In this document: positions 22,480 to 48,210 of the stretch, piece after piece
Layout: each line of letters begins with the position of its first letter
How positions within the stretch are numbered: the stretch's first letter is position 1
NCBI GenBank assembly: GCA_965285935.1
Contig: OZ260665.1
Location: 59,520,001 to 59,584,000 of the forward strand
Direction of reading: 5' to 3'
Source of the DNA: Ophelia neglecta
Lineage: Eukaryota
DNA length: 64,000 nt
The notes under the pieces: model-generated
Database searches by the model: none
The model's input: only the letters and a program-made list of their open reading frames with translations
Told to the model about the DNA's origin: nothing
Translations under genes and position numbers: made by a program

Positions 22480-22499
22480 GAAACGAAATGTCAGAAAAT

Positions 22500-23901: not shown

Positions 23902-23924
23902 CCCCCACCCCCTCCCCCAACCCC
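23902..23924 (-). other. G-quadruplex-forming motif (C-rich on +)
   Basis: C5-A-C5-T-C5-AA-C4 on the plus strand. Confidence 0.65.
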
Positions 23925-26632: not shown

Positions 26633-26690
26633 ATGGTCATTGTCTAATCATGGTCATTATGGTCATTGTCTAATCGTTGTCTAATCATTG
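26633..26690. repeat. Short nested tandem repeat (atggtcatt / tgtctaatc modules)
   Basis: atggtcatt x3 and ttgtctaatc x3, interleaved. Confidence 0.75.
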
Positions 26691-28052: not shown

Positions 28053-28357
28053 ACGTTTGGAGCATGAGATGAGACAACAGATCTGACTACCCGTTTGATT
28101 TCCTCAAAAATGTTTTCCTCAAAAGAGCATGTTAACTATATGCACTATTCTTAGAAGATATATGACGGTTGGATATTTGGAGGACTTGCTATAGTGAGTG
28201 TGGACAACCTTTTCATTGTCGCAGAAATAACGTATGGAATGGTTCGTTAACAGTTGTTTCGACATGTTCCGCAAGGAACTTGTTTGACCAAACATGTTTA
28301 TTTTTTTCTGGGCTGATTTTGATCGTTTTAAGCATCTTGACTTGTTTATACTTTTAG

Positions 28358-28459
28358 ATGATCCTGAATCTGAGCGTCCGCCAGTTTGTTATAACATAGC
28401 CTATCAAGGTCAGGAATCGGGGCGGCAGGATGGAGCAGATACTACTAACTCAATACTCA
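28358..28459 (+). CDS. CACNG5/7-like: Gene A coding exon 2 (102 nt, phase 1-1): second half of extracellular loop 1 with conserved Cys
   Basis: Acceptor cttgtttatacttttag|, donor |gtacgt; encodes DPESERPPVCYNIAYQGQESGRQDGADTTNSIL; final A + GA of the next exon gives R, continuing as RAIRKSS (cf. TARP RAVRASS). Confidence 0.82.
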
Positions 28460-28684
28460 GTACGTATACAAATTTACCAGAACCGTGCCAGTCCTCAAGA
28501 AATTTCGGACACGAAATCATTCGCTTGCGTTCTGCTCAGGCCAATATTGATAATATATATGTTTTCTTAACGTGATGAAAGATTATGTCTACAATTTGAA
28601 TCTAATCGAGTTGAGAATCATAACACTGGAATGAAAATATTTTAATTCCAACAAATTAAAAACTACTTTGTAATTACTGCTCAG

Positions 28685-28819
28685 GAGCTATTCGAAAGTC
28701 TTCACCAGTGTTAGTGGCCAGTTTGTTTTTTCAAATCACGGCCCTTGCTTTAAGTACTGTTGGAAACACCAAGAAGAATGCCAAAACTCTCGTAGGGGCA
28801 GTGTGTTTCATATCTTCAG
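28685..28819 (+). CDS. CACNG5/7-like: Gene A coding exon 3 (135 nt, phase 1-1): TM2 and start of TM3
   Basis: Acceptor tactgctcag|, donor |gtatgt; encodes AIRKSSPVLVASLFFQITALALSTVGNTKKNAKTLVGAVCFISS. Absent from the ORF track; read by hand. Confidence 0.88.
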
Positions 28820-29028
28820 GTATGTCCAAATTATTATTTTTAGTCTTGCCTAATAATATGTCAAGCTAGTTACCAAAGTTTGGGAACTTCCATTTAACTT
28901 CCGGTATGATTTGTATATAATTCTCTTTAAATATGGCCACCAATACAATCACTCAAAGGATGCGTCCATTTATAGTTGTTTATACAATTTAAAATAAAAA
29001 CCCAGTGATTTTCGAACTTAATTTTCAG

Positions 29029-29381
29029 CCCTGATCCTAGCGATAGGCGTTATCTTTTACATATCGGGCGTGAACGACGAGGTGTCACATCGAAAGGAGC
29101 CGAAGGATCCGCAAAATGACAAAGGCAAAACTTTTACATACGAATACGGATGGGCGTTTTTCTTTGCCGGGTCCTCTTTCATGCTGTCGATGATGGCGGC
29201 GGTTTCTAATATATCTCTGTATTTGCGGCGTTATCCCAATCTGGAAGATATGGTTCAAATCATCCCCGGCCTGGACAAACGGGGAGGCTTTGTGAACGTT
29301 TCCGGAACCAGCCGAGCAGTGGAGGAAGAAATGGAGTACAACACGCCGTATGGAGCTCAAAATCCGACCATAATCCTTTGA
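29029..29381 (+). CDS. CACNG5/7-like: Gene A terminal coding exon: TM3 end, loop 2, TM4 and short C-tail
   Basis: Acceptor cttaattttcag|; extends ORF 29070-29381 upstream (LILAIGVIFYISGVNDEV); YISxxNDEVxxR...FxYxYGWxFxFA...L..RY resembles gamma-5/7; TGA at 29379-29381. Confidence 0.92.
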
Positions 29382-30714
29382 AATTAAAATGTGATATTTC
29401 TAACTTGCTCTTACCGGAAGTAGCGACGAGCTACTTCCTTTGAGCCAACTTTGCAGAAATATTCACGTGTTGAGTAGAAATTTACTACTCATTCACCATT
29501 CGTTGCCTGCTGAAAGTACTACTCGGTTACTTCATTCGTCGATTGTAGGAGAAACATACCTTCTGGGAAGAGAATTTATATGATACTACTGGTTTGGGAA
29601 ATATTAAACATAATCTCCTACGAGTGGTATTGAAGTATTTCGCCACACAATGTCCTTACCTCCTTTAGCTTTAAAGAGATCTGTTGAAAATCGACGAAAA
29701 ATGTGTAAACGCTGGTCATAAGAATTTCGTGGATTGCTTATCGTCTGGTATTAGTATTGGAGCAGTTTAGGCAGTTCTTTTTACGAACGGAAGTCTAGTG
29801 TCCTCCTTTACTGTTTAGTCTTCCACTCAGTTTGATCTTCGGTACGCAGTTCGATTGTGTTGAGTGCCCTGACTATCCTCTATAATGTCCATTATTTTTA
29901 AGGTATCAGATTAACTCAGAAAGATAATGAAACTTGTACGGTAGACATATAGTGCATGCGTTTGCTAGCCACAATAAAACATGATGGGCACATAGATAAG
30001 GTTTTTTTAAACCCACTCTTTTAGTAAACTCTATGCATGTTGTATATATTTATCTGAAATATACTCATACTTATATTGTCGACAAATCAACGAATGTACA
30101 GACAATATGACAACTTGCCCTCCAAAGTGTATACATACATAGTCCTGTTTATGTCGGCGTGTTAGCTATATTGGTTTTAGAGAATGTCCTACCATGATTT
30201 TTTCGGGGCATGTTTGATTTGTTTCACTGAGTGCGCATGCGCATGCATATACTTCCTACAATGATGGCATAAGTAATAACCTAAACAGAATTGTATCATA
30301 AAGCTTACAGCGTATATTCAAGACACCTGGGCCCAGGTGTAATGCCTTTCTAATTTAAGGTTAATTTTAATGTTTGAGGAAATTACTGAGATGGACAAGG
30401 TAAAATATACGTTTGACTTAAATTAAATAGCCACTGAAGTGCTTGTCCGGACTGGCATGAAAAATGGGTAACCTCAGTCAAGGCAATTGATCCTCATTTA
30501 GCCTATATATGATTCATCCATATTTATTTTTTATGACAAACTGCTCTTAAGTATTTTTTTAAAATGTTTCAAAAATGTCGGTTTGTTTGTCCCCGTCGTA
30601 AAGTAGTATGTGTCCAAACATAGCGACTAGTCTGTATTGAGAAACCTTGATGCCTTTACATTTTGCCTTTTACATCCACTTGTTGACATTCTGATGTATA
30701 AACCACCTTTCGTA

Positions 30715-30720
30715 AATAAA
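30715..30720 (+). terminator. Candidate polyadenylation signal of gene A (alternative AATAAA at 29973-29978)
   Basis: AATAAA with upstream TGTA and downstream T/GT-rich tract (ttttcatccgggtttttttgc), 1.3 kb after the gene A stop. Confidence 0.4.
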
Positions 30721-30913
30721 CTGATTAAAGTACTTTTCATCCGGGTTTTTTGCTGACAGCTGAATATCAGGGTTGCTTATGTCAATAAGATATGAAATTT
30801 CATGTATGATAATTGTGATAAGCATACTATTTAAGCGTTAGGTATAATATGACGTCGGAGCTTGGAAATCTCTACACAATACTCTTCGTGGGTTAGAAGA
30901 TTGGAACAATGAT

Positions 30914-30919
30914 TTTATT
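30914..30919 (-). terminator. Candidate polyadenylation signal of gene B
   Basis: Minus strand reads ttttgtatAATAAAatc (TGTA just upstream); the first canonical minus-strand AATAAA I found after the gene B stop. A variant TATAAA near 31980 is an alternative. Confidence 0.3.
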
Positions 30920-33705
30920 ATACAAAAGTCCATTACAGGGATATGGTTTGTAATGCTCAATTCATTTCCATAATTCGTCAGTAGCGTTTGCTCACCAAAC
31001 TGCCGTAAAGGTCAGACAATGCATGTCTGGCAGCTTTGGACTGCTACGTCGATATCAACCAACTGCTCTGGAGCAACGCTCGTCATTCGACACTGCTTAT
31101 GTCCCCTCTTCACTTCACTTCACTGTCATGTCCTTGCCCAGTTAGACTTGTCTCCACCAGAGAGCGCTGCTCCTAGACGATGTCTGAAATCTTCATAAAT
31201 GAGCATGAATTATGCGGCCCGGCATCTTTTATGCCGGGAAGGGGGCTTGTAGTGGCAGATTGTGTTGCACACGAGATATGCTAACGTTACATACTGCAAT
31301 TCTCGCCACTCTTCGGGTGGAGATAAATGAATACCGGCCGACTGGCTCATATCAGTGAAAGGTAAAGAATAGGAGCTACTGGGAAAGGTGACAAGGATAG
31401 GTGACAATTGGCAAGTCCGGCTCGGTGATAGATTAGGGAGAAATTGAGCGCTGCCACACAAAAGTCAGCTTCAGTGTTGACCATGAGATCTTTAAGCTTG
31501 ATTTGCCCCTGGTCTACTTTACTGCACAAATAACAGACATCTGCCTTATCGATTTTGTCCATGGATCGACCGAAATAGAACAAATTTGTCGCGTTTGTCC
31601 TTGTAATTCTCACACCAACGACATTCTGTTATAAAAGCTCACAATGGAAAGGCGGGTGCCATTAAACTCCCTTATATTTTGTTCACTCGTTTCCAATACA
31701 GAATAATAATAATCTAACCTATTATGAATATATACTTTATATTTATCTGTGTTTTAGTAAATTTAAAATTATTGTGGCCTCTACCTTATCTCATTTCAAT
31801 TAATGCTGACATTGTTCTTATATGCTCTTTGTTGTGCAAGTTTTTTTTATGAACCAGACAATTGTTTATATTGATATATTCCCCTATAAAAATGGTCTGA
31901 GATGAAATATATCAAGATGTAGAAATCGCTCGGAAAAAGTAATAACGAATGTACTAGTTTAACCAAATCTCATATATTTTATAGAAAATATACATACATG
32001 TACAAGCAAAGTCCATAACCAAAATTAATCTGCATTATTAACCATAAACACATTCTTGCTAGATAATTTACATGTACGGTGGAGTAGGCGTGCGTTTCAC
32101 GCGCTTTATACACATTGCGATTACTCTTACAAGCCGATCGATCAATAACAACACCGAAATTGTAATTTCTGGAACATAAAGAGTTAATAAAACTTTGTTG
32201 GATCAATTGAGAGACTGGAGATACACATGATATGTATGAAATAGAGTCATCAGCAACCGACGAAGTCCGACAAACAACCACTATTGCCTTCCGAACAGTA
32301 GCGTTGTATAACATGGTGGATAAATGTACAGGAAATGATGACGTCACCCCGCTAAAAACAAACCCTGGGTCCCCACGAGGGGTCGGGGCGAGAAAAGGGC
32401 GAAATGTGGATGAGAGCTTATGAAAATGTACAGTGTATAGTGAGAGAGTGATGCCCCCTGGCGAGGGAAGCGGAAGAAGTGAACGTCCCTTTACAGGGTT
32501 AAATAAGAGTAGCGACATCTGTCGAATAAAGAGATGTTTATATAATGTGCAATGTTTTTTCGAGACGCCTCGACAAGCAGTAACGCCCCCTATCACAAAA
32601 ATCATTAATGGAAACTAGTTGATAACAGAGAGAATGAGAGGCAAGGCGGCTCTATCTACATCACGTCAGTCGGAAACAGAGTCGAGGGTGGAAGTAAATA
32701 ACAAATGCATTTAACTGAGACCAGAAACAGTCTTCTAATGATGTGCAATGTACATGTGTACCATATTAGTCAGACTAGACCTCAGCAGGCGAGCAGGCAC
32801 CACGCAAAATCGGCAAGACTTATGTCATAATTAAACAGTTACTAAGACATTAACTTCAGGATACGGGTAACCATCATTGATAAAAAATGCCTGCGAGTAA
32901 ACCTTGAACTTGATCTGGCAAACAGGACTAACACGATGTCTGCACTCAAGGGTTAAACATGGTGTCAGACGAAAATGGATCAAACCTCATCCCTGTTCGG
33001 TAAAGCAATACAATTTGATTCTTATTAATTGATTGATTCGTTGGCTGATTGGTTGAATTGATTGATAGATCTAAGTGATATGCCTTCACATATTAGTGAA
33101 TCACTCAAGGTGGAAGACCACAAAAATGATCCATAGAGCAGGGGCTTGATAACATTAAACCCAGCGCCTCCCCTGCCCTATCAAGTATTGAACGCTCCCT
33201 AAACTTAGCGTGTGGTGCCGCCGTGCGGTGAACGCAGTAACTAGTTAATATCCGTCTGAGAGAACAGACCAATTAAGGCTAACCATTACCTAAAACAAAA
33301 TTCTCTTTTTTCCTAAAAGTAAATGGCAGCTGATCCCAGAGTGACGAACGTCTGCAGTCGCCCGATCGTACCCTATTAGCCACTACAAAGTCACGTGACC
33401 CGAGGATCCTCCAGGCCAAGGCGCAAGTCACGTGAGCGACCAGGGCGTATGGGGTTATCACTGAACATTGCCTTGTGATCAAAAACCACTTGTCGTCTGC
33501 CTATCGTTTCTATTTCGACAGCTAAGATATACTGGTTAGATGATTGCTTAAGCTATCCACGATGGGAATTCCAAATGTGTCACGAATGACGTCATGTCAC
33601 ACAGGATGCACCCTAGACACCGACTCCGGTGTTACTTTACCTCTCAAATTGCAGAGAACTCCCTGTACGACAAATGAGTATTATCCTATGAGTGTTTGGG
33701 GTACT

Positions 33706-34388
33706 CTATACCGGGGTGGTGCGGCGCGCGTACGTGTCCAACGTGTCGGCCGAGCCCCTGTGGTCGTGCATCCCGCGATGATCAGCCATGCTCCGATGGT
33801 CTACCAGGGCCCGAGGGTCTACTCCACGATGGTCGACGACCATGGCCCGAGGATCACCCCCGATACGGTGGTCGGCCATGACACGTGGCTCGGACCGGTG
33901 GTGGTGTCCGGGTCCGCCGCCAGGGTGGTCCTTACACGGGTGGGTGTCGGCCGCCGTGCTAATGGTGTGTCGTGAGGGGTCGCGCGTCAGCGTGTAGTTG
34001 GACATCTCCTTCGAGGTGTCCGACACCGGCGTGTAGGTGTAGTACGTGTCTGAGTGTGAGGGCGAATTGTCGCGAGAGTGCTCTCGGGAACGATCGTGCG
34101 AATGAGACCTGGAACGCCGGTATCGTGCTTGAGGCTGGCGCTCGTTAGCGTCCAACATAGTCAGGCGTTCCTGCTTCTTCCGGTAGGCGTGTTTATGTCG
34201 GCTGATGTATAGGTAGACGGAGAGGACCCCCGTCAGCTCCGACACAATGAAAGAGCTTATAGTCATTATGAAAGAGGTGCCGTACGAATACTGGAATTTA
34301 GGCTTGTCCAACGTTGATTTAGGTTTATTTCCCACCTCCTCAGTTATAGCCCCTATGTATAATATAATCCCCACAAGTGTACACAGCC
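33706..34388 (-). CDS. CACNG2-like: Gene B terminal coding exon: TM3 end, loop 2, TM4, RS-rich tail and PDZ-binding motif RRTTPV
   Basis: Acceptor ttttctcgtttcag| (exon starts at 34388); extends ORF 33706-34374; GC-rich; ends RRTTPV-TAG, as in vertebrate type I TARPs. Confidence 0.95.
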
Positions 34389-37300
34389 CTGAAACGAGAA
34401 AACGACGTCATTATTAACAAAATTCCATTGCAAAACTTTCAACAAAGCATGAGTTTGTTTTTGATACATGTTTAATTAAATCCCATCCGCTCATGTCCCC
34501 ACCCTTCTATACCAGCGCAGCCTGAACAACCGCTGTCACAAGCTATGTTTTCTCAATCCGAGCCAGATCGGCCGACGTCTGAATCTAGAATCAAACACAT
34601 CCTATTTGAAAATAACCCCACTGTTTTTCCCTAAAGCATTAGGCTTCTACGAATCATACGCGTCCATTTATTCTTTTGCTGGAGAGGAGATTATATTAAA
34701 CATTGACGCCTCATTCCGACTCCACAGAGGGGACCTTCATGGAATTACTTTGTTTAACGTAACGACCAAAGTATAACTGTTTATAACGTAACAATAAATA
34801 AAGTCCTTGCACAATTATGTCAGGTCTTACAAATCATTACTGAAGCAAATAAATTTAATTATGGCTGATTTTCCATGTTAGACAACATTATACAATATGT
34901 AACTTCCCCCCCCCCCCCCCACTCCGTGACTCAATACAATTCGATGCTTACAAGGGCTGGCGATTGATGTACTGATGTGTGTGCCCGTGGTTTCTGATAA
35001 CTTGGGATCGATTAATGGACTATTCTACATTACTGACTTGGCTTTGTTTGCTAGGTATCCACACCCGTTTTTTCTCCAAAATTGGGCGTTGAGACTGAAC
35101 TGATCCTACTCAGTGTAGGGGAGGGGGCACTTAATATGCTGACTGCCCTGGTACGTTTTTTTTCTGTGATATGAGTACTAGTTTATGATCAAAGCAAATG
35201 TGACCAACAAAAATAAGTGGCTTTTTACTTTTCCTTAAACATCTATGCATAGGCCAAAAATATGTAGTTTAATTAATTGTCCTTGAAAAAGTAAGCCAAT
35301 GTCACATTCGGGGTCATTGGGTTTTCTAAGTTTCTCTCAATGCAATCATGAAATATCTACTAAAATAAAAAATTGGACTTCATTTCTAAGATACCCAAAG
35401 TTAGTTTTGATGTTACAATAGCACACTACTCGTGCCAGAAAAATAGCAATTTCACGCATTCTAAGTCTATGGAGTCACTTTCCCGTTTTTCTCTTCATTT
35501 CTTTAGTCTCATATAGCCAGCAGTACAGCAACCGTGAGCTGAATGTTGCTTATTTCTTTCATGTAATTATGTCACATCGAAAGCATTGGAACTATTCTTT
35601 TCAAACTTTCCAGCCATCAATACCTAACATTAACGAAATAGTTGAGATTTAGCTTACTGGCAAGACTATGCAGATTAATTGATATTTCGTATTGCAGCGG
35701 CGATGGGGTGGCGATAGAGCTTATTAGTTTAAAACTGAAGTGGTTTAACTAACAGCCACCTAACTAGTAAGCATAAATACGATATATAATTATTAGAACA
35801 CCCAATGAAGGGGAATTAGTTTAGGGGCACAGTCAATTGCTGGGATACTGCTGTCTTTGTAAAATAGGGTTTATGGGCAAAATATTGGCTGTGCACTAAG
35901 GTCTACGTTAAACATGTCCGACCAATGTCCCGTCCTCGAAACGCTTGCCGATCCAATTTGCATTACATCAGTTGCCAAGGAAAAATCACACAAGGGACAA
36001 CAAAGCAGTGTGTTCTAACCCTGGATACATCACTACTTAGCTTGACCATTTTGCATGTCACTTGTGGTCACAGGAGTAAATTATTCAAGAAGTTCTCGTC
36101 GTATATACTTCCCTTAAGGTCTTGAACCCTACGAAGACAGGGAGCTAGTAGTAAGACCTAGTTCCCAGCGATCCAATGGGGTTGGAATAAAGGAGCTAGT
36201 AGTATTTCCAACATGTGTTGTTTCCATATGCCGCCTGTTGTTTTCATGATTTGGGCGCTGTATGCGCAGACTATATAGAACCGAATTTCGGATTTGTTTA
36301 AGGCAAGTACTAATTACCTTACTTCATATTATTATCAATGAGAAGTGTTTTATTAATTCGGGGCTGAATAGTCTGTTACTCATAGATTATATTATAATTG
36401 ATTTTCTCGTTGTTTTTCAAATTGATTATACGCAGGTTTGATTATATCATTTCCTTTAGTTTAAACAACATAAATATATAACTTCTTTTTTTCATAGTCG
36501 TGGGTAAAGTTGTATTGCGCAGCCGAACATTCTTATGCAAAATATTAATGTCTACATTAATAGTAGACCTTATAACAAAAAAAATAATAATAATATAATT
36601 GTTCTTAGTAATAATCATAGAATTGCCATTGTTTGGCCAAGTCGAGGTTGTCGACTTCCGTTAGTCTATAAACATTTTTTACTAAGGAGGGGTGAAGTAC
36701 GGCAGGGATATCTATACCCAACGGAGTGGGGATCGGGAGGCAGCCAATCCAAATAGAGACCGAGGGGTCGATTATACCCATGTTGGACAAAGAGGAGCTT
36801 GCCATACATACTCTACCATTCGAAAAACGTGGAGGACAAAACCAACCACAAATACAAAAAAGGATTTTGCAGTTCTTAGAAACTTTCTCTGTTGAAACCA
36901 AACGACAGATATGCCTACTCTTATTCATGAATATATTCTATGCAGGCTAGAAAGGGCGTCTCGTCCGGCTGTAGATCATATTAGCCCTCCCTCAACAACC
37001 ACTTAACATCCCTCCCGAGACCTACAAACACTGGTTGCTTGGACCCCCTTATCGACTGTAAAATGGTTAAAGAACACAAGTATCGGTCCGAAGAGATGCT
37101 TATACGTTTTTATGTCATTTGCAAAAGTTGCCTTACGGCATTGGTATCAACAAACAAGAAAAAAATGTAAAAGGCGTCCGCCGTTATAACGTCTGACGCG
37201 TTGCGTTAATATCAATACCATTTCCAAAGATTGCACTTTGAGATTAATAGTGCAAGTCTCGTCTGCAAACCCTGGCTCCATGTGTGATAAAGAAGAAGCA

Positions 37301-40300
37301 GGTCCCATCTTGCAACAAAACAGCCTTTTTTGCCTTAGGGTCATTTAGTTTGCACAAAACGGATATTAGTTTCCATTTGTACTGCCAGAACACTTTGAAG
37401 ACACTCGGCGGGGGCGGGGGTAGGATAATATTGTTGTTATCACAATCTAGCGAGTCCAGCGTTAATTGATTGACAGGAGAGAGAAGCGTGCACTTTCAAA
37501 CAATTAGTTTTGAAGGGCTCGGTGTCGTTTTTAGACTAGGATTTCGTGCTGCTCTTGTTGGAGGCAAAGTAAAACTGGTAAACGAATTCCTGATGGTAAC
37601 ATGTCATTAGCACGGGGAGAGATTGTTACTAAGAGTGAGGGGAAGCTAATGTGAAGTGGCACATTATTGGAAGCGAATCTTTTACCGTTGATGCAACTTA
37701 ACGATAGCATTAAGAGGATTTTCTTTCCAATTCGGGAGGTTACGCTTTAGGATGATAGTTTCTGGAAAATATGATGTTTATTAATTGCGGGGCAATGCCA
37801 CGTGAAGCTCGTATTCTGATGGCTAAAAATAGGGATGGACTTTACCATGTATAGTTTGTTTAGATATTGTTCTAATCACAAGTGTTCCCCTTTTCTTTTT
37901 GCCTTGCACTGTCCTTCAAGTAGCAGGTATTTTATTCAAATCCTATAAGACCCTTCATTCACCTCATAAAAAGTTTGCAAATATTGTGTAATGTATAATT
38001 GTTAACATTGGAATATAAGCTGCGGTTTCTCTGCCAACCACTTTAATTTCTACTAATCAAACATATCTTATATTATTTCCAAATGTTTACTGTTAACCAA
38101 TTAGCACGAGGCAAAAAAATATATCCACCCATTAAATATTTCTCCAATATATGTAGTAGCATCTATGCTTTAAGTTTAGCTGAGATTGTGCATTAAATAA
38201 GAACGAACCATATCGCATTTACAAGACGGATAAAACACCCACCCCTACAAACAGGCGGCTTTATTAAATTGTTTATGCTGAAGACGAAACAAGGTTAAAT
38301 GCGAGTACTCGATAACTTCATTTGAGTTTACAAGTAATAAATAATCTATGAACTCGACATAAAGCTGGTAAAAACGAATTCAGAATTAAACTGATATACA
38401 TGAAAGTATGCACGTAGGTCAAATGTGACAACACGATAAAATGCACAGGGTGCATTTTCCAATGGTTTCCCCTGCAGAAAAGGCTGAAATAAAGATGCTT
38501 TTGGCCTAACCCTGAGGGTGAATATTTAGGTCAAACTTGATGACAATATTGGAATCACATCATATATTCTCCTATATGCTCCTAATACTAATTTTAGCTC
38601 TTTCAATAACTGCCATCGTAAAAGAGATAAACTCTGTGTACATGATTCTCCTTTTGCTTTTGCTCTGGCAAGGACAAGCATTTCCTAAAATGTTAATCGA
38701 TTCTTGTTTACGTTCATTTCGGCCCTGCAGGCTGCAATACTACTCTTCGCGCGTTCACAAGGTTTTTATTTTTCTCAACTTAAATAGTTTATGCTACAGG
38801 GTCTTGATATTACAAATCATCGTTTAATTCCATATGGGCAAACTGGTATCTGGGAGTCAATGATCTGTCAAGTTACAGAGGTTGAAATTTCGGCTTTGCC
38901 AGCAGCGGAGGACAGAGCCTATTATATACCGCCTTTCCTTTATTTCACCGAAAAAAAAGGTAAGAAAAAGAACAGGAATATTTTATTAATTACTATCGCA
39001 TACATAATAAAACGTATGATATTTACACATACTCGTCCCACAAGGGTTCAGGAAACAATACATTAAACTAATGGAACTACATACCAATCAAAAATATGGT
39101 AGAATTAACATCGAAAATGGATGAGAACATCTAAAACTTGATTCGATAGCTATTAAACATAAAATGCTTCATTGCACTATGGAGCAAGACCGTGTTCTTC
39201 TTCTAAGACGAACACAATTTGCGACAAGGGACTTTGTGAGTGCATAGAAGTGATTCAAAAGTAGAGGACTCTTTTTGTCTACTGCAGCATCAATAAAACT
39301 GCGATAGTGTTTTTTGCGTAGTCCTGGAATCTTCAAGCCTCCAATGCCATTTGGCAGTGGGCGATTAAATATTTACCAAAGATTGGGCACCCACGTAATG
39401 GGTCAAGATGGAGGATTGTCACTGGCAATGGTAGATACCAGGCGGATGAAAAAACTGCGCCAGTATTCAACCCAAACTGGGAAAGGAAAGCGCTAGCCGT
39501 TATAGTTAATTTATTCGTTATTATTGCAATTAAACTTCAGGTCTGAGTGAAGAGAATATGCAAACATCAGGCGTAAAGTATTTAAATATTAATAGGCATA
39601 TAATATGCTAACACAAAACTAGTGGGTGAAGTTATTCATTTTCTGAATTATTTAATTAATTAATTATTTACTTCACATAATTATAATATATTAAACATGG
39701 AAACAATTTTTTTAACTGTTCAAAAGTTAATCATAGGGCCTACAATTGTTTGTATTTGGGCAATATCCATTTAACTGCATATAAATCAGAACTATCAAGC
39801 TTTGGTTGATCAATTGCAAAATGCTCAAGGGAGTTGTGTGCTATCCACTGAGTAAAGCCCGTTTGTTTATTCCAATTTCAGACTTGGTGGCAAATTATTC
39901 TTAAACAGTGTGTCCTTTCAGTGAAACAGTCGTCCTAAATAGCGATGCCTTCGTTGCAGCTGCTCATTTCAACAATGGATTGCTCCCGTCGCGCGAGCTG
40001 TTCATTTTGGTTCAGTTCCGTGACCTCTCCCAGTCGAAACAGGAAACGAAACAACACCATTTACGTATTCCTGCTCTGGCGTCTGCCGATGAATTCGTTG
40101 TTTAAAATTGACAGATCTCCATTAAGACACTGGCGGATGATAGCAGCGAGCCCTCGTGATTTATGCGAACATCTCTCCGGCACGTGACTAGACTTGGTGA
40201 GGCCGGAAAACAACAGCTCAACAAGAGCGGGATTTGCAGTCGTCTGGTTCGAACGTGAGGCGAGACGAGGTGCGCTCGGAGGATAGCGTGAGGCTATGGG

Positions 40301-40814
40301 TCACAATTTATTGTACAGACAGCCCAAATAGCGATAATGTCACAAACTTGCCATAATATGCGAATGGTGTTTTAGCGTTAAATCGGATCTTTTTAGCTTA
40401 CATAACTAGGGTAAATAGCCTACTTCCCATTTAGAACGAATGGTGAGAGTGACGCTTTAGGTAAATCGCCAGGTTCTGGCAACGGTCAAAACAAAAAAGG
40501 GTGTTATCAATGGATGAACAGTCACCAATGAATAACTAAGATATAAACCCAAGATGATACTATACTCTAATATAATGTCATAGCAATAAATGCTACCCGT
40601 ATAATTAAATTGCGTCACATTAATGGAATGGTTCTTTTCTTACTATCGTGTTTCTTTATAATTATAGCTCTATATAATCGGTCAAATTGTTGACCATGTA
40701 TGAACCAACATAAACAGACGGTTCACTATAAATTAATACAAATGTATTACTTACAGGCAGATCTATCATTATCCCCACGAAATGTTTAAATGAAAGGATG
40801 AAAAGCATACTCAC

Positions 40815-40955
40815 CGCCCACAACAAATAAAATGCCCGCCACAAAGGTCATTATCTTTTTCTTATGATTGCAGTGACCTAGAAAGCAGACTATTTCTCCA
40901 ACCAGCAGAATAAGAAGACTTATCAGCGGAAATAACGTTGAACGCCGCATAGATA
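40815..40955 (-). CDS. CACNG2-like: Gene B coding exon 3 (141 nt, phase 1-1): TM2 and TM3 start
   Basis: Acceptor ttctcctttcattccag|, donor |gtgagt; SMRRSTLFPLISLLILLVGEIVCFLGHCNHKKKIMTFVAGILFVVG lies within ORF 40786-40995 and resembles stargazin [22 protein letters not shown]...IILSAGIFFVSAG. Confidence 0.93.
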
Positions 40956-43900
40956 CTGGAATGAAAGGAGAATTGGGAATCAGTATAGCCACCATACTAC
41001 TTACTACGTTACCTGTGAATACCGATTCATTAAATCAATTAGTTCAAATTTTGTATCAATCAGCTAATGATTAAATGAGTTAATTGCATGTGGTGTGACA
41101 GACATTTTTCTATTTAGTGCAAGAAAAGTCTACCCATGTCGTTTAATGATAATATCTCCATCTTAGTGTTATCGGCGGCTCATAATCTGCCCTGATATGT
41201 GATAAAAAATTGTCACATGCTGTTTTCCCTTTGCATCTGCACTAGATGGCTGCGGATTCGTAAAAAGTATAGCCATACCTAATTGTGCAGATACTCGTGA
41301 ATATGTGAAAGAGGATTGCGGTTTTATATACATATCATTATAAAAACGTGAGTGAATACCAGGCAGATAAAGTCAAATCTGAATATGACAAAACTACATG
41401 TAAATATGATCAAAAGTCCTTCACGATCATGTAATGTACATTCAAGAGAATATCTATAATAAATAAATTATTTAGAGAAGAAATCTTTTAAGAGACCTAT
41501 CTCATATTATCTGCTACAACTTTATAAAACACTGCTAGATATATTTAAATATAACCACGAAACAAATATACCTATATATATATATGTGTAGGTTTAAAAC
41601 CGATATCCGCCATTTAAAAGGTCTATTCGAAACCGGGCCTGACAGTAAAGAAAATGTATATAATCAGTGTTAATTAAAAGCACTCTTAATATGTGCTATG
41701 GTTTAGCTGTGTAGGCCTAGAAGTCAAGACCGCATGCAATCAATAACTGTGATTCTGCGATGATTGCAAATTCTTTCATTTTAGGAATAACTTTACGTTA
41801 CTCACGATATATTACTTGCAAAATATTAATTATGAGTGAAACTTTTTAATATGTAGTCAGGTAACCCAGTTAAAATGTCGTGAAAACAAACAACATTTAA
41901 TTGCCGTTAATGCATAATAAGGTATTCAATCCATCTCCACAAAACATAACACAGCGCTGTGTTATTGCAAAACTGTGATAGCTAATACATCTTATATTTA
42001 TGTCCATATGTACAGCGATAAGACTATAATATTAATAGGTTCGCAATAGACAGCTGAATGGAGAATTTAGTTTTCTGTATGACCACTACCTGTTGCGCTA
42101 TCACAGTAGGATACTAAAACAATGATATTTATCGCCAAATACTCTCTTTCAATTTATCCACATTGAAGAACCTCTCTAGCTATATGTTAATGACATAATT
42201 CTGTCATTTGATATTAGCAGAAACCAACTGTGGGCCTAATTATTTTTATTCCCGAAGTATGACATGGGATGTGAAAATATATCGGTTTCATGATCATTTC
42301 TCTATTGCCTTAAAGCATTATAGGCCCTTCATGTTTTTTACTCTATTATTTACGACTTCTTTGCTGCCGTAGCTCTGTACATGGCTCCTCGATAAAGAAA
42401 ATCACTCCATGTCTCGCCTCGTTTTACAAAAGTATTAGAGAATTGGCATATTTTCTAGCTCAGTAGTAGCCCACATAGCCCAATCAGCAGAGGAAGCTTA
42501 TATAAAACATCGCGTTTCGGATATTCATATATGCAAATCAAAACTTTTATCTCAAAACTGTTTGTGGCTGATATATTAAATGGCAAGAGTAGCGTGATGT
42601 TCATTGAATATTGTCGATAGTTTGGTGGATAGTTAAGAGAATCTTTTACAAATAAGTCCTAGTGACATAACTTGAAATAGGACACACACATCTATTAGTT
42701 TCGGTATCGGAGTTTTCCAACCGGTTCTCTCTCTATGCAATACCATAGCTGTTCTTTCATAAGCGATGGAAAGTTCTTTCAACTTTTGTGACTCTGAAAC
42801 AGCGTCTCCTTCCTCATGACCACGTGACGGAAATGACGACATGATGAATTGGATGTTTGCTTACCCTTGGCTGCATTTGGTTCCCGAATAATTAATATCA
42901 GGCGTGAGTCGAGCCGTGAGCGATAGGGGAGTTATTAAAGAATCATCCCGTGGCTGTAGGGAGGCTAGCTTGGGGAGCGACGGCATCCATCACCACAGTC
43001 CCCGCCACCGGCACATCCCAACAGTCTACCAGGCCGGCCGGCGGGCGGCGGCAACAGCAATAAAACCAAATTCCTGCTTTCAGGTTCAGTCCATCTTTTT
43101 CACAATCTGTCGTTCAGTAAATAAGAAAAAAATCATTCCATCCGAAGGCGCGAAGAGCTGTTGGTTCAGACGCCGCCTTCCCGAAGATTTGCCATTGTCG
43201 AATGCACAATATACGACAGCCTCAAACGCCTGCTCGTTATTGTTTTGTCACACGCGGTTTAGGAATGAACAAATGCTCTGCCCGTTCACCCATTCTCTGC
43301 AATCGTCTGGGCCGCGCAAAGTAGGCATACTGTCAGCTTAATTAGCAGAACCGCTTTATTGGAAAAAAGTACTGCAGGGGCAATACGCTTATTTCTATAG
43401 CGCAGCGAATCAGCACAAGGGAGTATGAAAGCTCGGGACAGTGCCTTTCAATGACCTGGAGTTGCACGTCAGTGAAATGGAAGATGGACGCCGTCGGGAT
43501 CGTAAACGATCACGTGAGGAATGATCCGCCGCAGACGTTCCTCATCAAAACACGATTACAAACCCATTCACGAAATGTGGTCAGCACACTCGACTTCAAT
43601 TCAAGTTAGCTGATAGTAACTGGCCAGAACGAAATGGAGACCCGTTAGATATTGGCTCAATACACTCGCATATTCTCAACTCGAGCAGGCATCTGATATG
43701 ATTCATGGCCACTTTAAAAGTACAAATAAGGAAATCCAATTTTAATTTTTTTTCTTACCAGAGTTACTGAAAACGTTATACATCATTTAGTCGGGCGACA
43801 CGCTGGGCTGGAGTGTAAAACGTATCAATCGAAAACACAGCAGATGGCTGGCGGCCCAGATGAAGAGATATGGAGCAATAGCTCGCCTGTCATCTCTTGT

Positions 43901-45867
43901 TTTGCTCATCTGTTCAATAAAGTTCTTGTAGGAATTGACTCTAGCGAGTTGCCTGTCACACGCACGCGGCCTGGTCTGATTTGGCCTTTTCGACCATTTT
44001 ATGAGAAATCGTGCGCCGGTCTAGTAATAAAGCAATGATTTATTGCAGATAAATGACACCGGAACTTCCTACAGCCAAGAATTTCTAGGACGGACCGAGC
44101 CGGGCGCAGTATGACCGACATGAGAAGATGGGCAATGGCCTCCGACTCTTTCCGAAGCACTTGGGCGTCTGCTTAGGTATCAGGAAATGTATTGTAAATC
44201 TACTGCTCTTGTTATATACGGTCGGACGCAATGTGCAATTAATGTTGGCAAAACAAGAACGTTTTCAAAATGTCAAGGTTGGCTTACACTGCAATGAAGA
44301 TCCAGCTATAAAACAAATTATCACCGTCAATTAGATTAAACATTGGGTGAAGTCTTTCAAATTTTGTCCGTTTTCTTATAAAACGTCTTGTATATGCACG
44401 TTTAGGTTAATATAGGATACTTCTAATCACTTTTCTTCAATCGTTTGTTGTGTTGGTGTTGGAGGGGGATGCTTTTCTTGGCAAGATTAATCCGTAAACG
44501 ACGTGTAGGTAGAATAATACGAATGTGTATTTCTCTCTAATTATTTAAAATTCATAATGTTAGCCTATTCTCTATGGTGACTGCTTACATAATACGTTGA
44601 TAGTGTGTCGATAAGAATAAGAGACATCAGTGAATCTTAACCCAAATTTAAAACATAATCTGTAACGTCACGATTTGCTCCAAAGACCCAAAAATGACTA
44701 GGCATAATAGTGCCATCAACGGGTGATGTATTGCAGTACGCCAAATATACCTATTATAGGCCTACTTGAGAATATACATTTTTCCGTCATATCGTGTGCC
44801 AATATAGCAGTTTTGTAGTCGCAAATTAAGAATGAGACTGATTAAGGCAATGCTTGAATCCACTGAGTCGCCTGGCCTGGCAATTGTGGAAAAAGTGTTG
44901 ATGCCAACTGGACCACCGCATCCGTCTGTAGGTTACCGTGACATTGATATTGTAGTGTCGCACGCCTCCAGACAGACGGAATGATGGCTGGACGTTCTGA
45001 GTAAAGGCCCTGTATCTAATACCTCTGACTACCTGTCACTGATGAAAACTTCCGGTGATCAACTGGTGGAGGTCAAGGAAGGGTAAGCCGAGATGGTCAT
45101 CCTTACTGCTGAATATTGGCCATACTGGAACAAAACGCTCAAAGATCAACAGGCGTGCTACAAAAAAAGGTAATCACTGGTTGGAGACATGTTGGTCTAC
45201 CGAATGACCCGGCCTATCATGCTACATCATATTACAAGTGATATCAATCATTTTCCTTATTCACAGTTAGGGAACTGTTCGCTGATGTTTGTGAGTGTCC
45301 AGCTGATGGTTCCTTCTGATTTCGGACTCATTTCTTCCTATGAATACATTCTTGATCGGTGACTTTGCTTTGCCTCCCGAGTATCTACTCAATTATTCTC
45401 CAGATATGGAAATGAAGCAATTGCTATAATACTGGTGCCTTGTGAACAAAAATGAAAGGAATGCCGTGCCTGGACCAATGATATTTATTGTCCACAAGGA
45501 AAGCGAAGATTGTCTTGCTCCATTACTAGAATAAAATAGGAATGCCAAGCAGCATTGGTCGCCTCCTCTTGACCCATGCTTTGACGATTTTTTGTTCGAC
45601 GAGTAAGACCTGTGATTCAAGGATCCGTGCGCGAATTCCACTTTCTTTAAAGACCATTTTGGAAAACCAAATTTTCAAACAGCAAGTGAACGAGACGGGG
45701 TTTGGATGGCATCTGAACAAATATAACATTTACGGATTCAATATTGTGGCGTTAACACAAGACTTTTAAAGTTTTCACTGAAACCAAGGCCATAGAGTGC
45801 AACTTTAGATGAACAGTCGTGATCCTCTTAGTAAAAGTAGATTATCAAACAATAAACGAAGAATACC

Positions 45868-45904
45868 AGAGAGAGAGAGAGAGAGAGAGAGGTAGAGAGA
45901 GAGA
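45868..45904. repeat. (AG)n microsatellite with one interruption
   Basis: Directly visible agagag...ggtagagagagaga. Confidence 0.9.
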
Positions 45905-47640
45905 TCTTCTCGAGGCTATGTTGTAAACATTTTGGGGGACCGTCGAAAAAGAGACTAGAAATAATATGGACAATTATTACTGAATCATTCCATTATCGTC
46001 TAAGGCGTCTCGTGGATGTCCAACTGACCCTGTTCCATCCTACTACGAGACAAACATATAAACTCCTGATATCAGGAGACAAGTTTATATATTCTGTGTT
46101 AACTACCGGTCGAAAGGTCTTCAACCCGACAACCTGTACCAAAAGGACAACCATGTAGGACGGTAGTTCTCGAGAACAACCAACTTGTGATAGGATTTGA
46201 CGACTCACCTCAGCATTTTAAAGAAGAGAGATAGCATGACATTGGTTAGATATCGCTTTTGCGGCTTCACCGGGGATCAAGAGTGGGTCTTCAAGATTCT
46301 GTTTAAACGATATATAGTATTCCATGGCGGCATTTTTCGAGTAGATGCCGAAAAGACAGGTCCCGTTTGCCTGAAATACGGTATGCATATAGCGATTGCC
46401 AAATCCGCTGACGCTGCTACTCTCCGGACACTTCACATAAACTTGATGAAGAGACTGGCGGAGGGATACAGAATAGAACGCCGCCTCTCCATCATCATTA
46501 AAAATGTAAAATGCTAAATCACACGGTAAGCGGAAGTCAATTCTACGATCAGTACCAATCCATTGAAGGCAAAGCTTCGTCGACCACCCCATACTTGGAA
46601 AATGCTGCAACCTCATTCTTCGTTACCACAGCGCTCTTTTGTGGCGATGATGTCTCATCTCACTGAAAAACGGAAGATGACTTGCTATGGCTTGAAAATG
46701 GCTCTATTTGCATCTGTTTCTCCGGGGTTTTAAAAAAAGAAGCTGTTTGCAGTTATTGAACTAGGTTTTATTTCAAATGGGCTCTGACGGTTTTGTTTTA
46801 TCTGCCGGGTGTCCACTCAACTTTAGATTACTGTTTTGTACAGATTATGACTGATAATCGACGCACTTGTCTTGGAGAAGATGGGTAGTCTTTATACAGC
46901 TAAATTACCGAATACTTTTAATATGGATTAGAAAGTGCATATCATGCGTGTATTCCAGTATGTACAATTTTCGCAATATGGTGCGGGATTGCGGGGGATG
47001 GTTGGTTCGGTTAATACATGAGCCCTATTAGTGTAGCGCTTCGCTTGGTGTTATAAACACATAGGCCGGGGTAACTACCATTGATCGGGTCTGGGGTATG
47101 TGAGTCCGACACGATGGGACGTCAGCCTGTATTAGTCCTCGGCTTTCCATGTACACTCAAGCTAATTACACCCTGCTCGGCCAGCAGCGATAATTAATAT
47201 AGATGGCAACCGCAAGAGGGAGAGCGACGACGAGCAGCAATTGGTACCTGACGTATCTATGGCCAAGCATGCGGTTGCATGATGTGGGAAGAAGGGGGTG
47301 GGATGGGTAGAAACGGTAACAGTCAGGATGATGGGAAGAAGAAAGGGACAGGAGTCTATAGTTATCCCAAATTACTCTGATTAATAAGTTTTAATTACTT
47401 TTTGATTGACTATAGTATTGGAGGGGGAGGGGTCACAGTCGGCCTCAGTTCCTCTCGATAATCAGTATTTTGCATACATTTAGTGCAGAAGGAGAAGGAG
47501 ATGGAAACGTACTCGTTTAGGGGTAGAATCATGTCGAAAGCAAGCCCGATCACACGCGTGTACATATTACCCTTTAGAAAACACACATCACTCCAATGGG
47601 AAGTTAAGGTACATTCAAATATTGCAGTGTCCTTAGTCCT

Positions 47641-47768
47641 CGCAGGTACCCAACCTGCACCCGGATGAAGTGAAGCATTCGGGAGAGAACGATTTGCTTA
47701 GGGTTCTTCGCGGATTCGAACTCATTACCATACGATCAAGAGACGAACGTGAATTTAATACCTCAACC
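47641..47768 (-). mobile_element. Degenerate tRNA-derived SINE fragment
   Basis: Minus strand shows a tRNA-like head with Pol III B-box GAGTTCGAATCC (47712-47723), then ccctaagcaaat...cttcatccgggtgcaggttgggtacc, resembling the CCTTGAGCAAG...CACCCAGGTG...TGGGTACC core of many metazoan SINE2 families (from memory). Confidence 0.55.
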
Positions 47769-48117
47769 CGTTCTAAAGAATCGACTGTATAGAGCGGAAT
47801 AAAGAAGCGGTGAAAGAGAAGGTCTCATTCACAGAGTCACTCTGTTGTAATAGACCCGAGGGGTAAAAACTGCAGACCAAGCAATTTCTGCGACATATAT
47901 GTGGCGTGGAAGAGGCTAAAAATGGCCTCAACTACTCGGTATTACGGGGTTGAAGGGGCAGTTTGGGCTAGAAGATGTACTCAGTTTCTCCTCCGAAGTA
48001 TGTGGTGGATGCGATGGAGGGGCCATCTAGACACGAACGCCTACACTAATAATCTTGTTGATCGATTAACAAAATGTGTAAAAAGTCTCACACGAATCAA
48101 AAATCTAATATACTTAC

Positions 48118-48210
48118 ATAATATAGATTCTGTTGGCCCGAGACCATCCCGGTCCATATGTGTGAAGTAATTAATATAGCTGCAGTTTTTCTTTTTATGG
48201 TGTTCTCCTG
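48118..48210 (-). CDS. CACNG2-like: Gene B coding exon 2 (93 nt, or 90 nt from 48207; phase 1-1): extracellular loop 1 with conserved Cys
   Basis: Minus-strand acceptor gcttgcctttcag|(cag), donor |gtaagta; encodes GEHHKKKNCSYINYFTHMDRDGLGPTESIL (C-x-x-I-x-Y/H-F pattern of TARPs); in frame with the next exon. Not in the ORF track. Confidence 0.88.

What the first reader, a model, noticed from the sequence alone, without database searches (positions are those of the whole stretch)
28358..48210. Linked type II-like and type I-like TARP pair, possibly a pre-vertebrate form of the CACNG cluster, here tail-to-tail
Seen: two divergent CACNG paralogues with homologous phase-1 introns, convergent, stops 4324 bp apart. 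Gene A loop2/TM4 (YISGVNDEV...YGWAFFFA...LRRY) resembles gamma-5/7; the gene B tail is gamma-2/3/4/8-like. Established: vertebrate type II and type I TARPs are neighbours (CACNG5-CACNG4-CACNG1 beside PRKCA; CACNG7-CACNG8-CACNG6 beside PRKCG) and lie in tandem orientation. Inference: the type I/type II split and their linkage may predate vertebrates, with a local inversion, so this animal would have a two-component AMPA-receptor auxiliary system.
Basis: partly seen in the sequence, partly recalled or inferred. Interest (0 to 1): 0.82.

Follow-up and report, generated by a model that had tools for sequence, protein, structure and literature searches.

The report
Two neighbouring annelid TARP genes
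Two real stargazin-family (TARP) genes lie tail to tail 4.3 kb apart in an annelid-like genome; one is the protostome relative of vertebrate type I TARPs, the other belongs to a known protostome-only TARP lineage rather than clearly to type II, and the tight pairing was not found in the other species checked.

Summary
Gene A (+) and gene B (-) are intact four-exon CACNG/TARP genes. All their introns are phase 1 at matching positions, and their stop codons are 4324 bp apart. The given span holds only exons 2-4 of each; both first exons lie outside the window.

Gene B ends in RRTTPV. It groups with Capitella, Octopus, Tubulanus and Lingula proteins as sister to vertebrate type I TARPs (support 99/97; 98/92 without the tail).

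Gene A's loop2/TM4 does score best against gamma-7 and gamma-5. But gene B's same region also scores higher against gamma-7 than gamma-2, so this looks like shared ancestral similarity. In all three rooted trees type II groups with type I plus B-like, and the A-like proteins (all protostome) stay outside. AU tests of an A-like + type II clade gave p = 0.14, 0.25 and 0.003.

Linkage: no A-like exon lies within 10 kb of the B-like gene in Capitella, another annelid contig or Tubulanus. In Tubulanus the two genes are 2.5 Mb apart on one chromosome. A conventional PKC sits 14 Mb away on the same chromosome.

Two TARP lineages in spiralians are already published and tested in Lingula. Only the adjacency is new. 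No RNA data were available.

The parts
1..28357 (+). Part of intron 1 of gene A. Exon 1 lies 27.4 kb before the window at G000:C8:59492339-59492558.
   Evidence: The exon 1 candidate was found by a six-frame search of the window's own genome. It reads M...ATDYWLY...HSGLWRAC and ends in a GT donor in phase 1. No ORF of 130 aa or more with family likeness lies in this stretch.
28358..28459 (+). Gene A exon 2 (second half of extracellular loop 1)
   Evidence: AG acceptor, GTACGT donor, phase 1 at both ends. Aligns with A-like proteins such as P0093.
28685..28819 (+). Gene A exon 3 (TM2-TM3)
   Evidence: AG acceptor and GTATGT donor, phase 1. Carries the two-residue shorter TM2-TM3 loop shared by all A-like and arthropod rows.
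29029..29381 (+). Gene A exon 4 (end of TM3, loop 2 with the NDEV motif, TM4 with YEYGWAF, tail with IIPGL and the end PTIIL, stop)
   Evidence: PDB phmmer best hits are gamma-7 at 3.2e-11 and gamma-5 at 1.4e-9. The exhaustive HMMER search found 252 relatives.
29382..33705 (.). 4324-bp spacer between the two stop codons (may hold both 3' UTRs)
   Evidence: Coordinates. Spanned by one read-derived contig. No exon matching the TTPV-ending tail of the A-like protein P0093 was found here.
33706..34388 (-). Gene B exon 4 (end of TM3, loop 2 with ITEEV, TM4 with YSYGTSF, long cytoplasmic tail ending RRTTPV, stop)
   Evidence: 72-86% identical to annelid proteins. PDB best hit gamma-2 at 2.9e-18 over residues 2-150.
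40815..40955 (-). Gene B exon 3 (TM2-TM3)
   Evidence: tblastn with Capitella P0012 gives 79% identity. Splice sites in phase 1.
48118..48210 (-). Gene B exon 2 (second half of extracellular loop 1)
   Evidence: tblastn with Octopus P0022 and Tubulanus P0027. AG acceptor and GTAAGT donor, phase 1.
48211..64000 (-). Part of intron 1 of gene B. Exon 1 lies 31 kb beyond the window at G000:C8:59614999-59615191.
   Evidence: Own-genome search hit at 8.3e-14 to residues 1-55 of P0012. Reading and GT donor.

Best explanation
The locus holds two intact, anciently diverged members of the TARP branch of the CACNG/claudin family in an annelid-like genome. They sit in convergent orientation with 4.3 kb between their stops.

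Gene B is the annelid orthologue of the widespread protostome TARP that is sister to vertebrate type I TARPs (gamma-2/3/4/8). It has a four-pass membrane core, a long Arg/Ser-rich tail and a class I PDZ ligand, RRTTPV. I infer that it binds AMPA-type glutamate receptors and anchors them to PDZ scaffolds as stargazin does.

Gene A belongs to the second, protostome-only TARP lineage. Members of this lineage have the NDEV loop-2 motif, a TM2-TM3 loop two residues shorter than in the other groups, and a tail with IIPGL and a hydrophobic end such as TIIL. The lineage branches outside type I plus type II. By the match of descriptions it is the lineage that Wang et al. 2026 call protostome-specific, which includes C. 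elegans STG-2 and Lingula g12410.

A's likeness to gamma-5/7 is mostly retained ancestral sequence. Type II has changed least, and gene B is just as similar to it in the membrane core.

Shown here: gene structures, homology, tree positions, and the genomic distances in the species examined. Inferred: AMPA-receptor modulation, from published tests on what I take to be the Lingula members of both lineages, and that the tight pairing is restricted to this lineage. The pairing could still be an eroded remnant of an old tandem duplication, because both genes share a chromosome in three spiralians.
For: Gene models with canonical phase-1 splice sites at matching positions.

B-like orthologues ending in RRTTPV occur in Capitella, Ridgeia, Owenia, Octopus and Tubulanus; the Lingula one ends in MTPV.

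The type I + B-like clade has support 99/97, 98/92 on the 209 membrane-core columns and 99/95 on the reduced set.

Type II + type I + B-like exclude A-like with support 99/95, 97/78 and 100/99 (same calls). The A-like + type II clade costs 15.0, 9.2 and 17.4 log-likelihood units, with p-AU 0.14, 0.25 and 0.0034.

Every A-like protein that could be named is a protostome: oysters, mussels, scallop, gastropods, Argonauta, Lingula, Tubulanus, Owenia, insects and a nematode.

A-like and arthropod rows share a two-residue shorter TM2-TM3 loop against types I and II, B-like and the outgroup.

Gene B's loop2/TM4 scores gamma-7 49.6 bits against 40.8 for tail-less gamma-2. Core identity to type II is 35.1% for A and 35.7% for B.

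Published trees and oocyte tests describe the same two protostome lineages (PMC13520880; PMC7653359).
Against: The rooting rests on only two related, long-branched outgroup sequences: a TMEM114/gamma-1-like paralogue of this genome and its one database relative. No vertebrate gamma-1/6, TMEM114/235 or GSG1L sequences could be fetched, and no hemichordate sequences or amphioxus type I-like sequences.

Two of the three AU tests do not reject A-like + type II.

A-like proteins occur only in protostomes and type II only in deuterostomes. This complementary distribution is explained most cheaply if they are counterparts: one duplication and no loss, against two duplications and two losses.

A chance juxtaposition of two paralogues within 4 kb is unlikely in itself.

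No RNA run holds the locus, so expression and splicing are unconfirmed.
Confidence: 0.68

Rival explanations
1. Gene A is the protostome counterpart of vertebrate type II TARPs, gene B of type I. Their adjacency is a remnant, with one inversion, of the ancestral tandem pair that became the vertebrate CACNG5-CACNG4 and CACNG7-CACNG8 clusters.
For: A's exon 4 matches gamma-7 and gamma-5 best among solved structures. Vertebrate gamma-5/7, but no intact type I, are among the best 150 of an exhaustive search. A-like proteins are protostome-only and type II deuterostome-only in my sample, which this reading explains with one duplication and no loss. AU tests on the full and core alignments do not reject it, with p 0.14 and 0.25. 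A-like and B-like genes share a chromosome in this genome, Tubulanus and Owenia. The conventional PKC is on the same chromosome. Fused gene models with gamma-7 followed by gamma-8 confirm the vertebrate tandem arrangement.
Against: No tree recovers the clade. Type II joins type I + B-like with 97-100 bootstrap. The AU test rejects the clade at p 0.0034 once long-branch rows are removed. The NDEV-type motif is also nearly present in B-like proteins (ITEEV) and so is probably ancestral. A's tail and its end (PTIIL) are unlike gamma-5/7. Tight adjacency is absent in Capitella, a second annelid contig and Tubulanus. The PKC is 14.2 Mb away, and sharing a chromosome has roughly an 11% chance from chromosome size alone. 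The gamma-1/TMEM114-like paralogue is on another chromosome, C1.
Confidence: 0.22
2. A and B are products of a recent duplication, specific to annelids or lophotrochozoans, that then diverged fast.
For: They are adjacent and share an identical intron-phase pattern.
Against: They are only 30% identical in the membrane core. Each has closer orthologues in molluscs, brachiopods and nemerteans. Arthropods have named A-like proteins, and some unnamed B-like hits have arthropod-looking tails. Holding A-like + B-like together costs 18.6 log-likelihood units, p-AU 0.054. The shared intron pattern is also seen in the Tubulanus B-like and amphioxus type II-like genes.
Confidence: 0.03
3. One of the two is a non-functional copy, and the pair has no joint role.
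For: No RNA run holds the stretch, so transcription is untested.
Against: Both reading frames are open across four exons with canonical splice sites. Conserved motifs are kept: GLWR.C, Y.YG.SF and the end motifs. Both have short terminal branches in the trees, 0.39-0.46 for A and 0.09-0.11 for B.
Confidence: 0.05

Closest known systems
Protostome TARP related to vertebrate type I (Lingula Lin-g21034 lineage of Wang et al. 2026; NCBI's 'gamma-5 subunit-like' of Capitella, Octopus, Tubulanus, Lingula)
   Same: Gene B is 70% identical to the Capitella protein over the aligned columns. It has the same four-exon layout, the ITEEV loop 2, YG[STV]SF at TM4, SRHKHAYRKKQ after TM4, the SPSHSDTYYTYTPVSD and YTL.RDP tail motifs and the end RRTTPV.
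   Different: Gene B carries an extra His/Asp/Arg-rich repeat stretch between the RDP motif and the PDZ ligand. The Capitella, Octopus and Tubulanus proteins lack it.
Vertebrate type I TARPs (stargazin/gamma-2, gamma-3, gamma-4, gamma-8)
   Same: Sister clade of gene B's group (99/97). Shared tail logic and the -TTPV PDZ ligand. PDB match to gamma-2 at 2.9e-18 including the tail.
   Different: Only about 34% identity in the membrane core. Loop 2 is ITEEV rather than NAGD/E, and the TM4 motif lacks the Trp (YGTSF against YGWSF).
Protostome-specific TARP lineage (Lingula Lin-g12410, C. elegans STG-2; TARP-beta of Lottia in Ramos-Vicente and Bayes 2020)
   Same: Gene A groups with Lingula, Owenia, Tubulanus, mollusc, insect and nematode proteins. 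They share NDEV or close variants, the shorter TM2-TM3 loop, a tail with EDM..IIPGL (MVPGA in insects) and, in most spiralian members, a hydrophobic end such as TIIL or TLIL. They take a basal position, as in the published trees.
   Different: That P0089 is Lin-g12410 is inferred from the paper's description, not checked by accession. Monophyly of the whole A-like set is not recovered, though it is not rejected either (p 0.10).
Vertebrate type II TARPs (gamma-5, gamma-7)
   Same: Best structure-database match of gene A's exon 4. Shared YIS..NDEV loop 2 and YGW.F.
   Different: Not a clade with A in any tree. Different C-terminus (TSPC/SSPC against PTIIL). The TM2-TM3 loop is two residues longer in type II.
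Vertebrate CACNG clusters (CACNG5-4-1 near PRKCA; CACNG7-8-6 near PRKCG)
   Same: Two TARP paralogues of different lineages are direct neighbours here. A conventional PKC lies on the same chromosome.
   Different: Convergent rather than tandem. No gamma-1/6-like third member nearby; the closest such paralogue is on C1. The PKC is 14.2 Mb away. The pairing was not seen in the other species checked. The vertebrate arrangement itself is from my own knowledge. It is supported here only by fused gamma-7 + gamma-8 gene models and by a paper that lists PRKCG and CACNG6/7/8 in one chromosome bin.

Membership tests
TARP branch of the CACNG-GSG1 family (claudin superfamily) | Four-pass claudin-type membrane protein, recognisably homologous to TARP gamma subunits | tested here: met
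   Single exons score below Pfam's cut-off (PF00822 and PF13903, E 0.003-0.07). They match solved TARP chains at 3e-11 (A) and 3e-18 (B). Full-length orthologues carry PF00822/PF13903.
TARP branch of the CACNG-GSG1 family (claudin superfamily) | Conserved loop-1 GLWR.C and the Y.YGWSF motif at the start of TM4 (Ramos-Vicente and Bayes 2020) | tested here: met
   A has HSGLWRAC and YEYGWAF. B has TGLWRKC and YSYGTSF. The Trp is replaced in all B-like proteins (motif from PMC7653359).
TARP branch of the CACNG-GSG1 family (claudin superfamily) | Falls inside the TARP clade against a non-TARP family member | tested here: met
   All A-like, B-like, type I and type II rows are separated from the TMEM114/gamma-1-like outgroup pair by a 100/100 branch. 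The outgroup is thin, with only two sequences.
TARP branch of the CACNG-GSG1 family (claudin superfamily) | Binds and modulates AMPA-type glutamate receptors | not testable with these tools
   Published oocyte recordings show this for the two Lingula TARPs (PMC13520880). Their equivalence to the A-like and B-like lineages is inferred.
Type I TARP lineage (gamma-2/3/4/8 and invertebrate relatives) | Clade with vertebrate type I that excludes type II | tested here: met
   Gene B: 99/97, 98/92 without tail columns, 99/95. Gene A: not in this clade.
Type I TARP lineage (gamma-2/3/4/8 and invertebrate relatives) | Cytoplasmic tail with an Arg/Ser-rich stretch, YTL.RDP and a C-terminal -TTPV class I PDZ ligand | tested here: met
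   Gene B's translation ends RRTTPV. The tail aligns with gamma-2 residues up to 287 and adds about 29 bits over tail-less constructs.
Type II TARP lineage (gamma-5/7) | Clade with vertebrate gamma-5/7 (and amphioxus gamma-5-like) | tested here: not met
   Gene A and all A-like rows lie outside type II + type I + B-like (99/95, 97/78, 100/99). AU p for the forced clade is 0.14, 0.25 and 0.0034.
Type II TARP lineage (gamma-5/7) | Loop-2 motif YIS..NDE[VI] | tested here: met
   Present in gene A. It is not diagnostic: B-like proteins have the close variant I[TA][EQS]E[VA], and two further paralogues of this genome also have NDEV.
Type II TARP lineage (gamma-5/7) | Atypical C-terminus (-TSPC / -SSPC) and a YRPHP..YRPRLS tail | tested here: not met
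   Gene A's tail reads EDMVQIIPGL... and ends PTIIL.
Vertebrate-type CACNG gene cluster | Type II, type I and gamma-1/6-type genes as tandem neighbours | tested here: not met
   Only two genes are present and they are convergent. The gamma-1/TMEM114-like paralogue is on contig C1.
Vertebrate-type CACNG gene cluster | Conventional PKC gene beside the cluster | tested here: not met
   The best Pkinase_C and a C1 hit lie at C8:45.227-45.283 Mb. The last exon matches PKC beta at 1.3e-20. This is 14.2 Mb from the pair on the same chromosome.
Vertebrate-type CACNG gene cluster | Adjacency conserved in other phyla | tested here: not met
   No A-like exon within 10 kb 3' of the B-like gene in Capitella, annelid contig L009 or Tubulanus. 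In Tubulanus the pair is 2.5 Mb apart. In Owenia the two are on one chromosome, with accessions about 134 apart. In Lingula they are on different scaffolds. Closer annelids could not be read.

The most novel reading that the evidence does not exclude
The 4.3-kb tail-to-tail pair is a surviving remnant of the tandem duplication in the bilaterian ancestor that produced the TARP lineages. On this reading the A-like lineage is the fast-evolving protostome counterpart of type II. The core of the vertebrate CACNG cluster, and its chromosome-level association with conventional PKC, would then predate the protostome-deuterostome split.
Probability: 0.18. Interest if true: 0.6.

Novelty: new member of a known kind. 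Interest (0 to 1): 0.3.

Why it matters
Whether invertebrate TARPs map onto vertebrate types I and II is an open point. Two published phylogenies left it unresolved (PMC7653359, PMC13520880). This locus gives clean annelid gene models for both protostome TARP lineages. The trees built around it add support for a pre-bilaterian origin of the type I lineage, and they argue that likeness to gamma-5/7 is not evidence of type II orthology. The direct adjacency of the two lineages is, as far as the papers read here go, unreported. If it proved ancestral, it would date the CACNG cluster to before the vertebrates. On present evidence it is a modest, lineage-restricted synteny observation about genes of a known kind.

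Tried and rejected
**Exon 1 search.** A motif scan of the window for first exons (TDYWL, GLWR.C) found none. They turned up only in the own-genome search.

**Word-based protein searches.**
- The search with the gamma-8 part of a fused fish model returned only gamma-8-like rows among its best 120. Gamma-2 and gamma-4 are therefore represented by one model each, and gamma-3 not at all.
- The search for outgroup relatives of the C1 paralogue gave a single protein.
- No vertebrate gamma-1/6, TMEM114/235 or GSG1L sequences, and no hemichordate sequences, could be brought in.
- No fused gamma-8 + gamma-6 model was found that could serve as an outgroup.

**Contig look-ups.**
- The Owenia A-like record was withheld, and the Owenia B-like protein was not on record.
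- The Octopus gene was too long to return DNA.
- The two closest annelid contigs returned no DNA. In one of them a 68-residue ORF lies on the opposite strand about 4.3 kb past the B-like stop. That is where gene A's last exon would be, but it could not be read.
- The contigs of P0072 and P0001 were too short to help.
- The amphioxus type II-like locus has no second TARP within 10 kb.

**RNA evidence.** No RNA run holds the stretch. The read-laying run could only confirm the DNA arrangement.

**Alternative last exon.** I looked for an alternative TTPV-ending last exon of gene A, as the tail of P0093 suggests. None was found.

**Method note.** The joined four-exon proteins were built only inside scripts from the held files, for alignment and trees. 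All database searches were done exon by exon by reference, and no search was made with a joined model.

Full report
**What is there**

The window is G000:C8:59520001-59584000 of a 762-Mb assembly. Its best protein matches are annelid: unnamed annelid-like contigs at 72-86% identity, then Capitella, Ridgeia and Owenia at 71%, 68% and 52%. The window holds no N.

Translation, tblastn with orthologues and inspection of the splice sites give two four-exon genes.
- Gene A (+, 269 aa): exon 2 at 28358-28459, exon 3 at 28685-28819, exon 4 at 29029-29381.
- Gene B (-, 369 aa): exon 2 at 48210-48118, exon 3 at 40955-40815, exon 4 at 34388-33706.

Neither first exon is in the window.

All six introns are phase 1 and sit at the same alignment positions in both genes. 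The stops are 4324 bp apart and convergent. One read-derived contig spans 28900-34500.

**What the two proteins are**

Gene B ends in RRTTPV. It has clear orthologues in Capitella, Ridgeia, Lamellibrachia, Owenia, Octopus, Tubulanus and Lingula. Several unnamed hits with long low-complexity tails look arthropod-like.

Gene A's last exon, searched exhaustively against 1.84 billion representatives, has 252 relatives. Those that could be named are all protostomes: oysters, mussels, scallop, limpets, abalone, Biomphalaria, Argonauta, Lingula, Tubulanus, Owenia, three insects and a filarial nematode. Vertebrate and lamprey gamma-5/7 and an amphioxus gamma-5-like protein come lower in the same list. 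No intact type I protein is among the best 150.

Against solved structures:
- Gene A's exon 4 scores gamma-7 46.8 bits, gamma-5 41.6, gamma-8 33 and gamma-2 29.
- Gene B's exon 4 scores gamma-2 69.9 bits with the tail. Over the membrane part alone it scores gamma-7 49.6 against 40.8 for tail-less gamma-2.

The second figure is a warning, though: the gamma-7-like look of loop 2/TM4 is not special to gene A.

**Phylogeny**

I built the joined A and B proteins inside a script from the held files. I aligned them with:
- 17 A-like proteins, three insect proteins and one nematode protein;
- seven type II proteins (gamma-5 and gamma-7, lamprey, amphioxus);
- six type I proteins (gamma-8, one gamma-4-like, one gamma-2 model cut before an annotation artefact);
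- six B-like proteins.

The outgroup was a TMEM114/gamma-1-like paralogue of this genome on C1 plus its only database relative.

| Data set | Type I + B-like | Type II + type I + B-like, A-like excluded |
|---|---|---|
| 255 columns, LG+C20+F+G4 by PMSF | 99/97 | 99/95 |
| 209 membrane-core columns (no tail) | 98/92 | 97/78 |
| Seven long-branch rows removed | 99/95 | 100/99 |

The A-like rows form an unresolved basal grade next to the outgroup in all three trees.

AU tests of forced clades:

| Forced clade | Data set | Log-likelihood cost | p-AU |
|---|---|---|---|
| A-like + type II | full | 15.0 | 0.14 |
| A-like + type II | membrane core | 9.2 | 0.25 |
| A-like + type II | reduced | 17.4 | 0.0034 |
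| A-like + B-like | membrane core | 18.6 | 0.054 |
| A-like alone | reduced | 4.9 | 0.10 |

The alignment shows a two-residue shorter TM2-TM3 loop shared by the A-like and insect rows only. It also shows NDEV in A-like and type II against the close ITEEV in B-like and NAGD/E in type I.

Core identity of gene A to type II is 35.1%, and of gene B 35.7%. To type I the figures are 29.0% and 34.3%. The type I stem is long, at 1.3-1.5 changes per column. Type II therefore looks like the least changed lineage, and likeness to it is largely ancestral.

**Reading of the trees**

Gene B is the protostome relative of type I. The separation of the type I lineage from type II thus predates the protostome-deuterostome split.

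Gene A is not shown to be type II. It belongs to the lineage that published work treats as protostome-specific and basal. Wang et al. 2026 give a type I branch containing protostome TARPs (support 96.1/56), a deuterostome-only type II branch (82.4/88), and a basal protostome branch containing STG-2 and Lingula g12410 (93.9/74).

Ramos-Vicente and Bayes 2020 could not assign invertebrate TARPs to either type. My trees agree with Wang et al. and give higher support for the first node.

There is a caveat. My outgroup is thin and long-branched. A-like is protostome-only and type II is deuterostome-only, and this complementary distribution is explained most cheaply if they are counterparts. I therefore leave that reading about one chance in five.

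**Linkage**

- **Capitella:** the gene 3' of the B-like gene encodes a product with a weak CARD match. No A-like exon lies in the 10 kb beyond it.
- **A second annelid contig (L009):** its B-like last exon is 71% identical to gene B's (80% in the protein search). There is no A-like exon within 10 kb.
- **Tubulanus:** the B-like gene is at 9.58-9.62 Mb (+) and the A-like gene at 7.06-7.08 Mb (-) of the same 27-Mb chromosome. They are 2.5 Mb apart and point away from each other.
- **Owenia:** both are on the 38.9-Mb chromosome, with accession numbers about 134 apart.
- **Lingula:** they are on different scaffolds.
- **Two closer annelid contigs:** these gave no DNA. One shows a 68-residue ORF on the opposite strand at the expected place, which I could not read.
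- **Amphioxus:** the type II-like gene has no TARP neighbour within 10 kb.

**Conventional PKC and other paralogues**

The conventional PKC of this genome lies at C8:45.227-45.283 Mb. It was identified by a C1 hit, the best Pkinase_C hit, and a last exon matching PKC beta at 1.3e-20. That is the same chromosome but 14.2 Mb away.

The gamma-1/TMEM114-like paralogue is on C1. Two more NDEV-type paralogues are on C9 and C7.

Tight pairing is thus so far peculiar to this genome. Only chromosome-level co-location recurs, and in related spiralians that amounts to roughly one independent observation.

**Function**

This part is inferred. Both proteins are expected to be auxiliary subunits of AMPA-type receptors. 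Gene B has the stargazin-like tail and a class I PDZ ligand. Gene A has a different conserved tail (EDM..IIPGL) and a hydrophobic end.

The two Lingula TARPs both raised currents of Lingula AMPA receptors, by about 5-fold and 15-fold. They had different effects on glutamate potency and on the response to quinoxalinediones. I take them to represent the B-like and A-like lineages. A two-component auxiliary system in spiralians is therefore already known.

No RNA run holds this locus, so expression and splicing here remain untested.

**Verdict**

The genes are real and correctly described. The type I assignment of B is supported. The type II assignment of A and the ancestral-cluster reading are not supported, though they are not excluded. 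I file the locus as a new member of known kinds, with a small new synteny observation.

Noticed in passing
G000:C8:45227106-45283343 (outside the window); L013 368-574 and L014 223-426: A conventional PKC gene whose last exon matches PKC beta at 1.3e-20. About 5 kb upstream lies a second open frame that also matches the Pkinase_C profile. This looks like two alternative C-terminal exons, as in mammalian PKC beta I/II (that comparison is from memory).
   Followed up: partly
L006 350-664 (G000:C9:62534767-62534964) and L007 352-612 (G000:C7:22816651-22816854): Two further CACNG-like last exons, very similar to each other, on two other chromosomes. Both carry the NDEV loop motif but have a short tail without IIPGL. 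They are probably a lineage-specific pair of A-like copies. Their other exons were not modelled.
   Followed up: partly
L008 52-660 (G000:C1:49497551-49498159): A distant family member whose loop 1 to C-terminus is encoded in one 202-residue open frame without introns. Its nearest Atlas clusters are TMEM114, TMEM178 and gamma-1-like. Only one relative was found in the 5.8-billion-protein word search.
   Followed up: partly
window 33754-33930 (-): Gene B's tail holds a His/Asp/Arg-rich repeat stretch (DHR and D/EPR units) between the YTL.RDP motif and RRTTPV. The Capitella, Octopus and Tubulanus orthologues lack it. A 143-residue antisense open frame (33544-33975, +) is probably a by-product of this G+C-rich repeat.
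   Followed up: partly
protein P0093 (JGI transcript-like contig, 1993 bases): This A-like protein is 60% identical to gene A in the membrane core. It diverges right after TM4 (YLRR) and ends in ITTPV instead of IIPGL...TIIL, which suggests an alternative last exon giving a class I PDZ ligand in some A-like genes. No such exon was found downstream of gene A in the window.
   Followed up: yes
proteins P0190 and P0329: A fish gene model fuses the second half of gamma-7 to the first half of gamma-8. A bird model fuses a full gamma-7 to gamma-8. Both are annotation read-throughs that incidentally document the head-to-tail gamma-7/gamma-8 arrangement in vertebrates.
   Followed up: no
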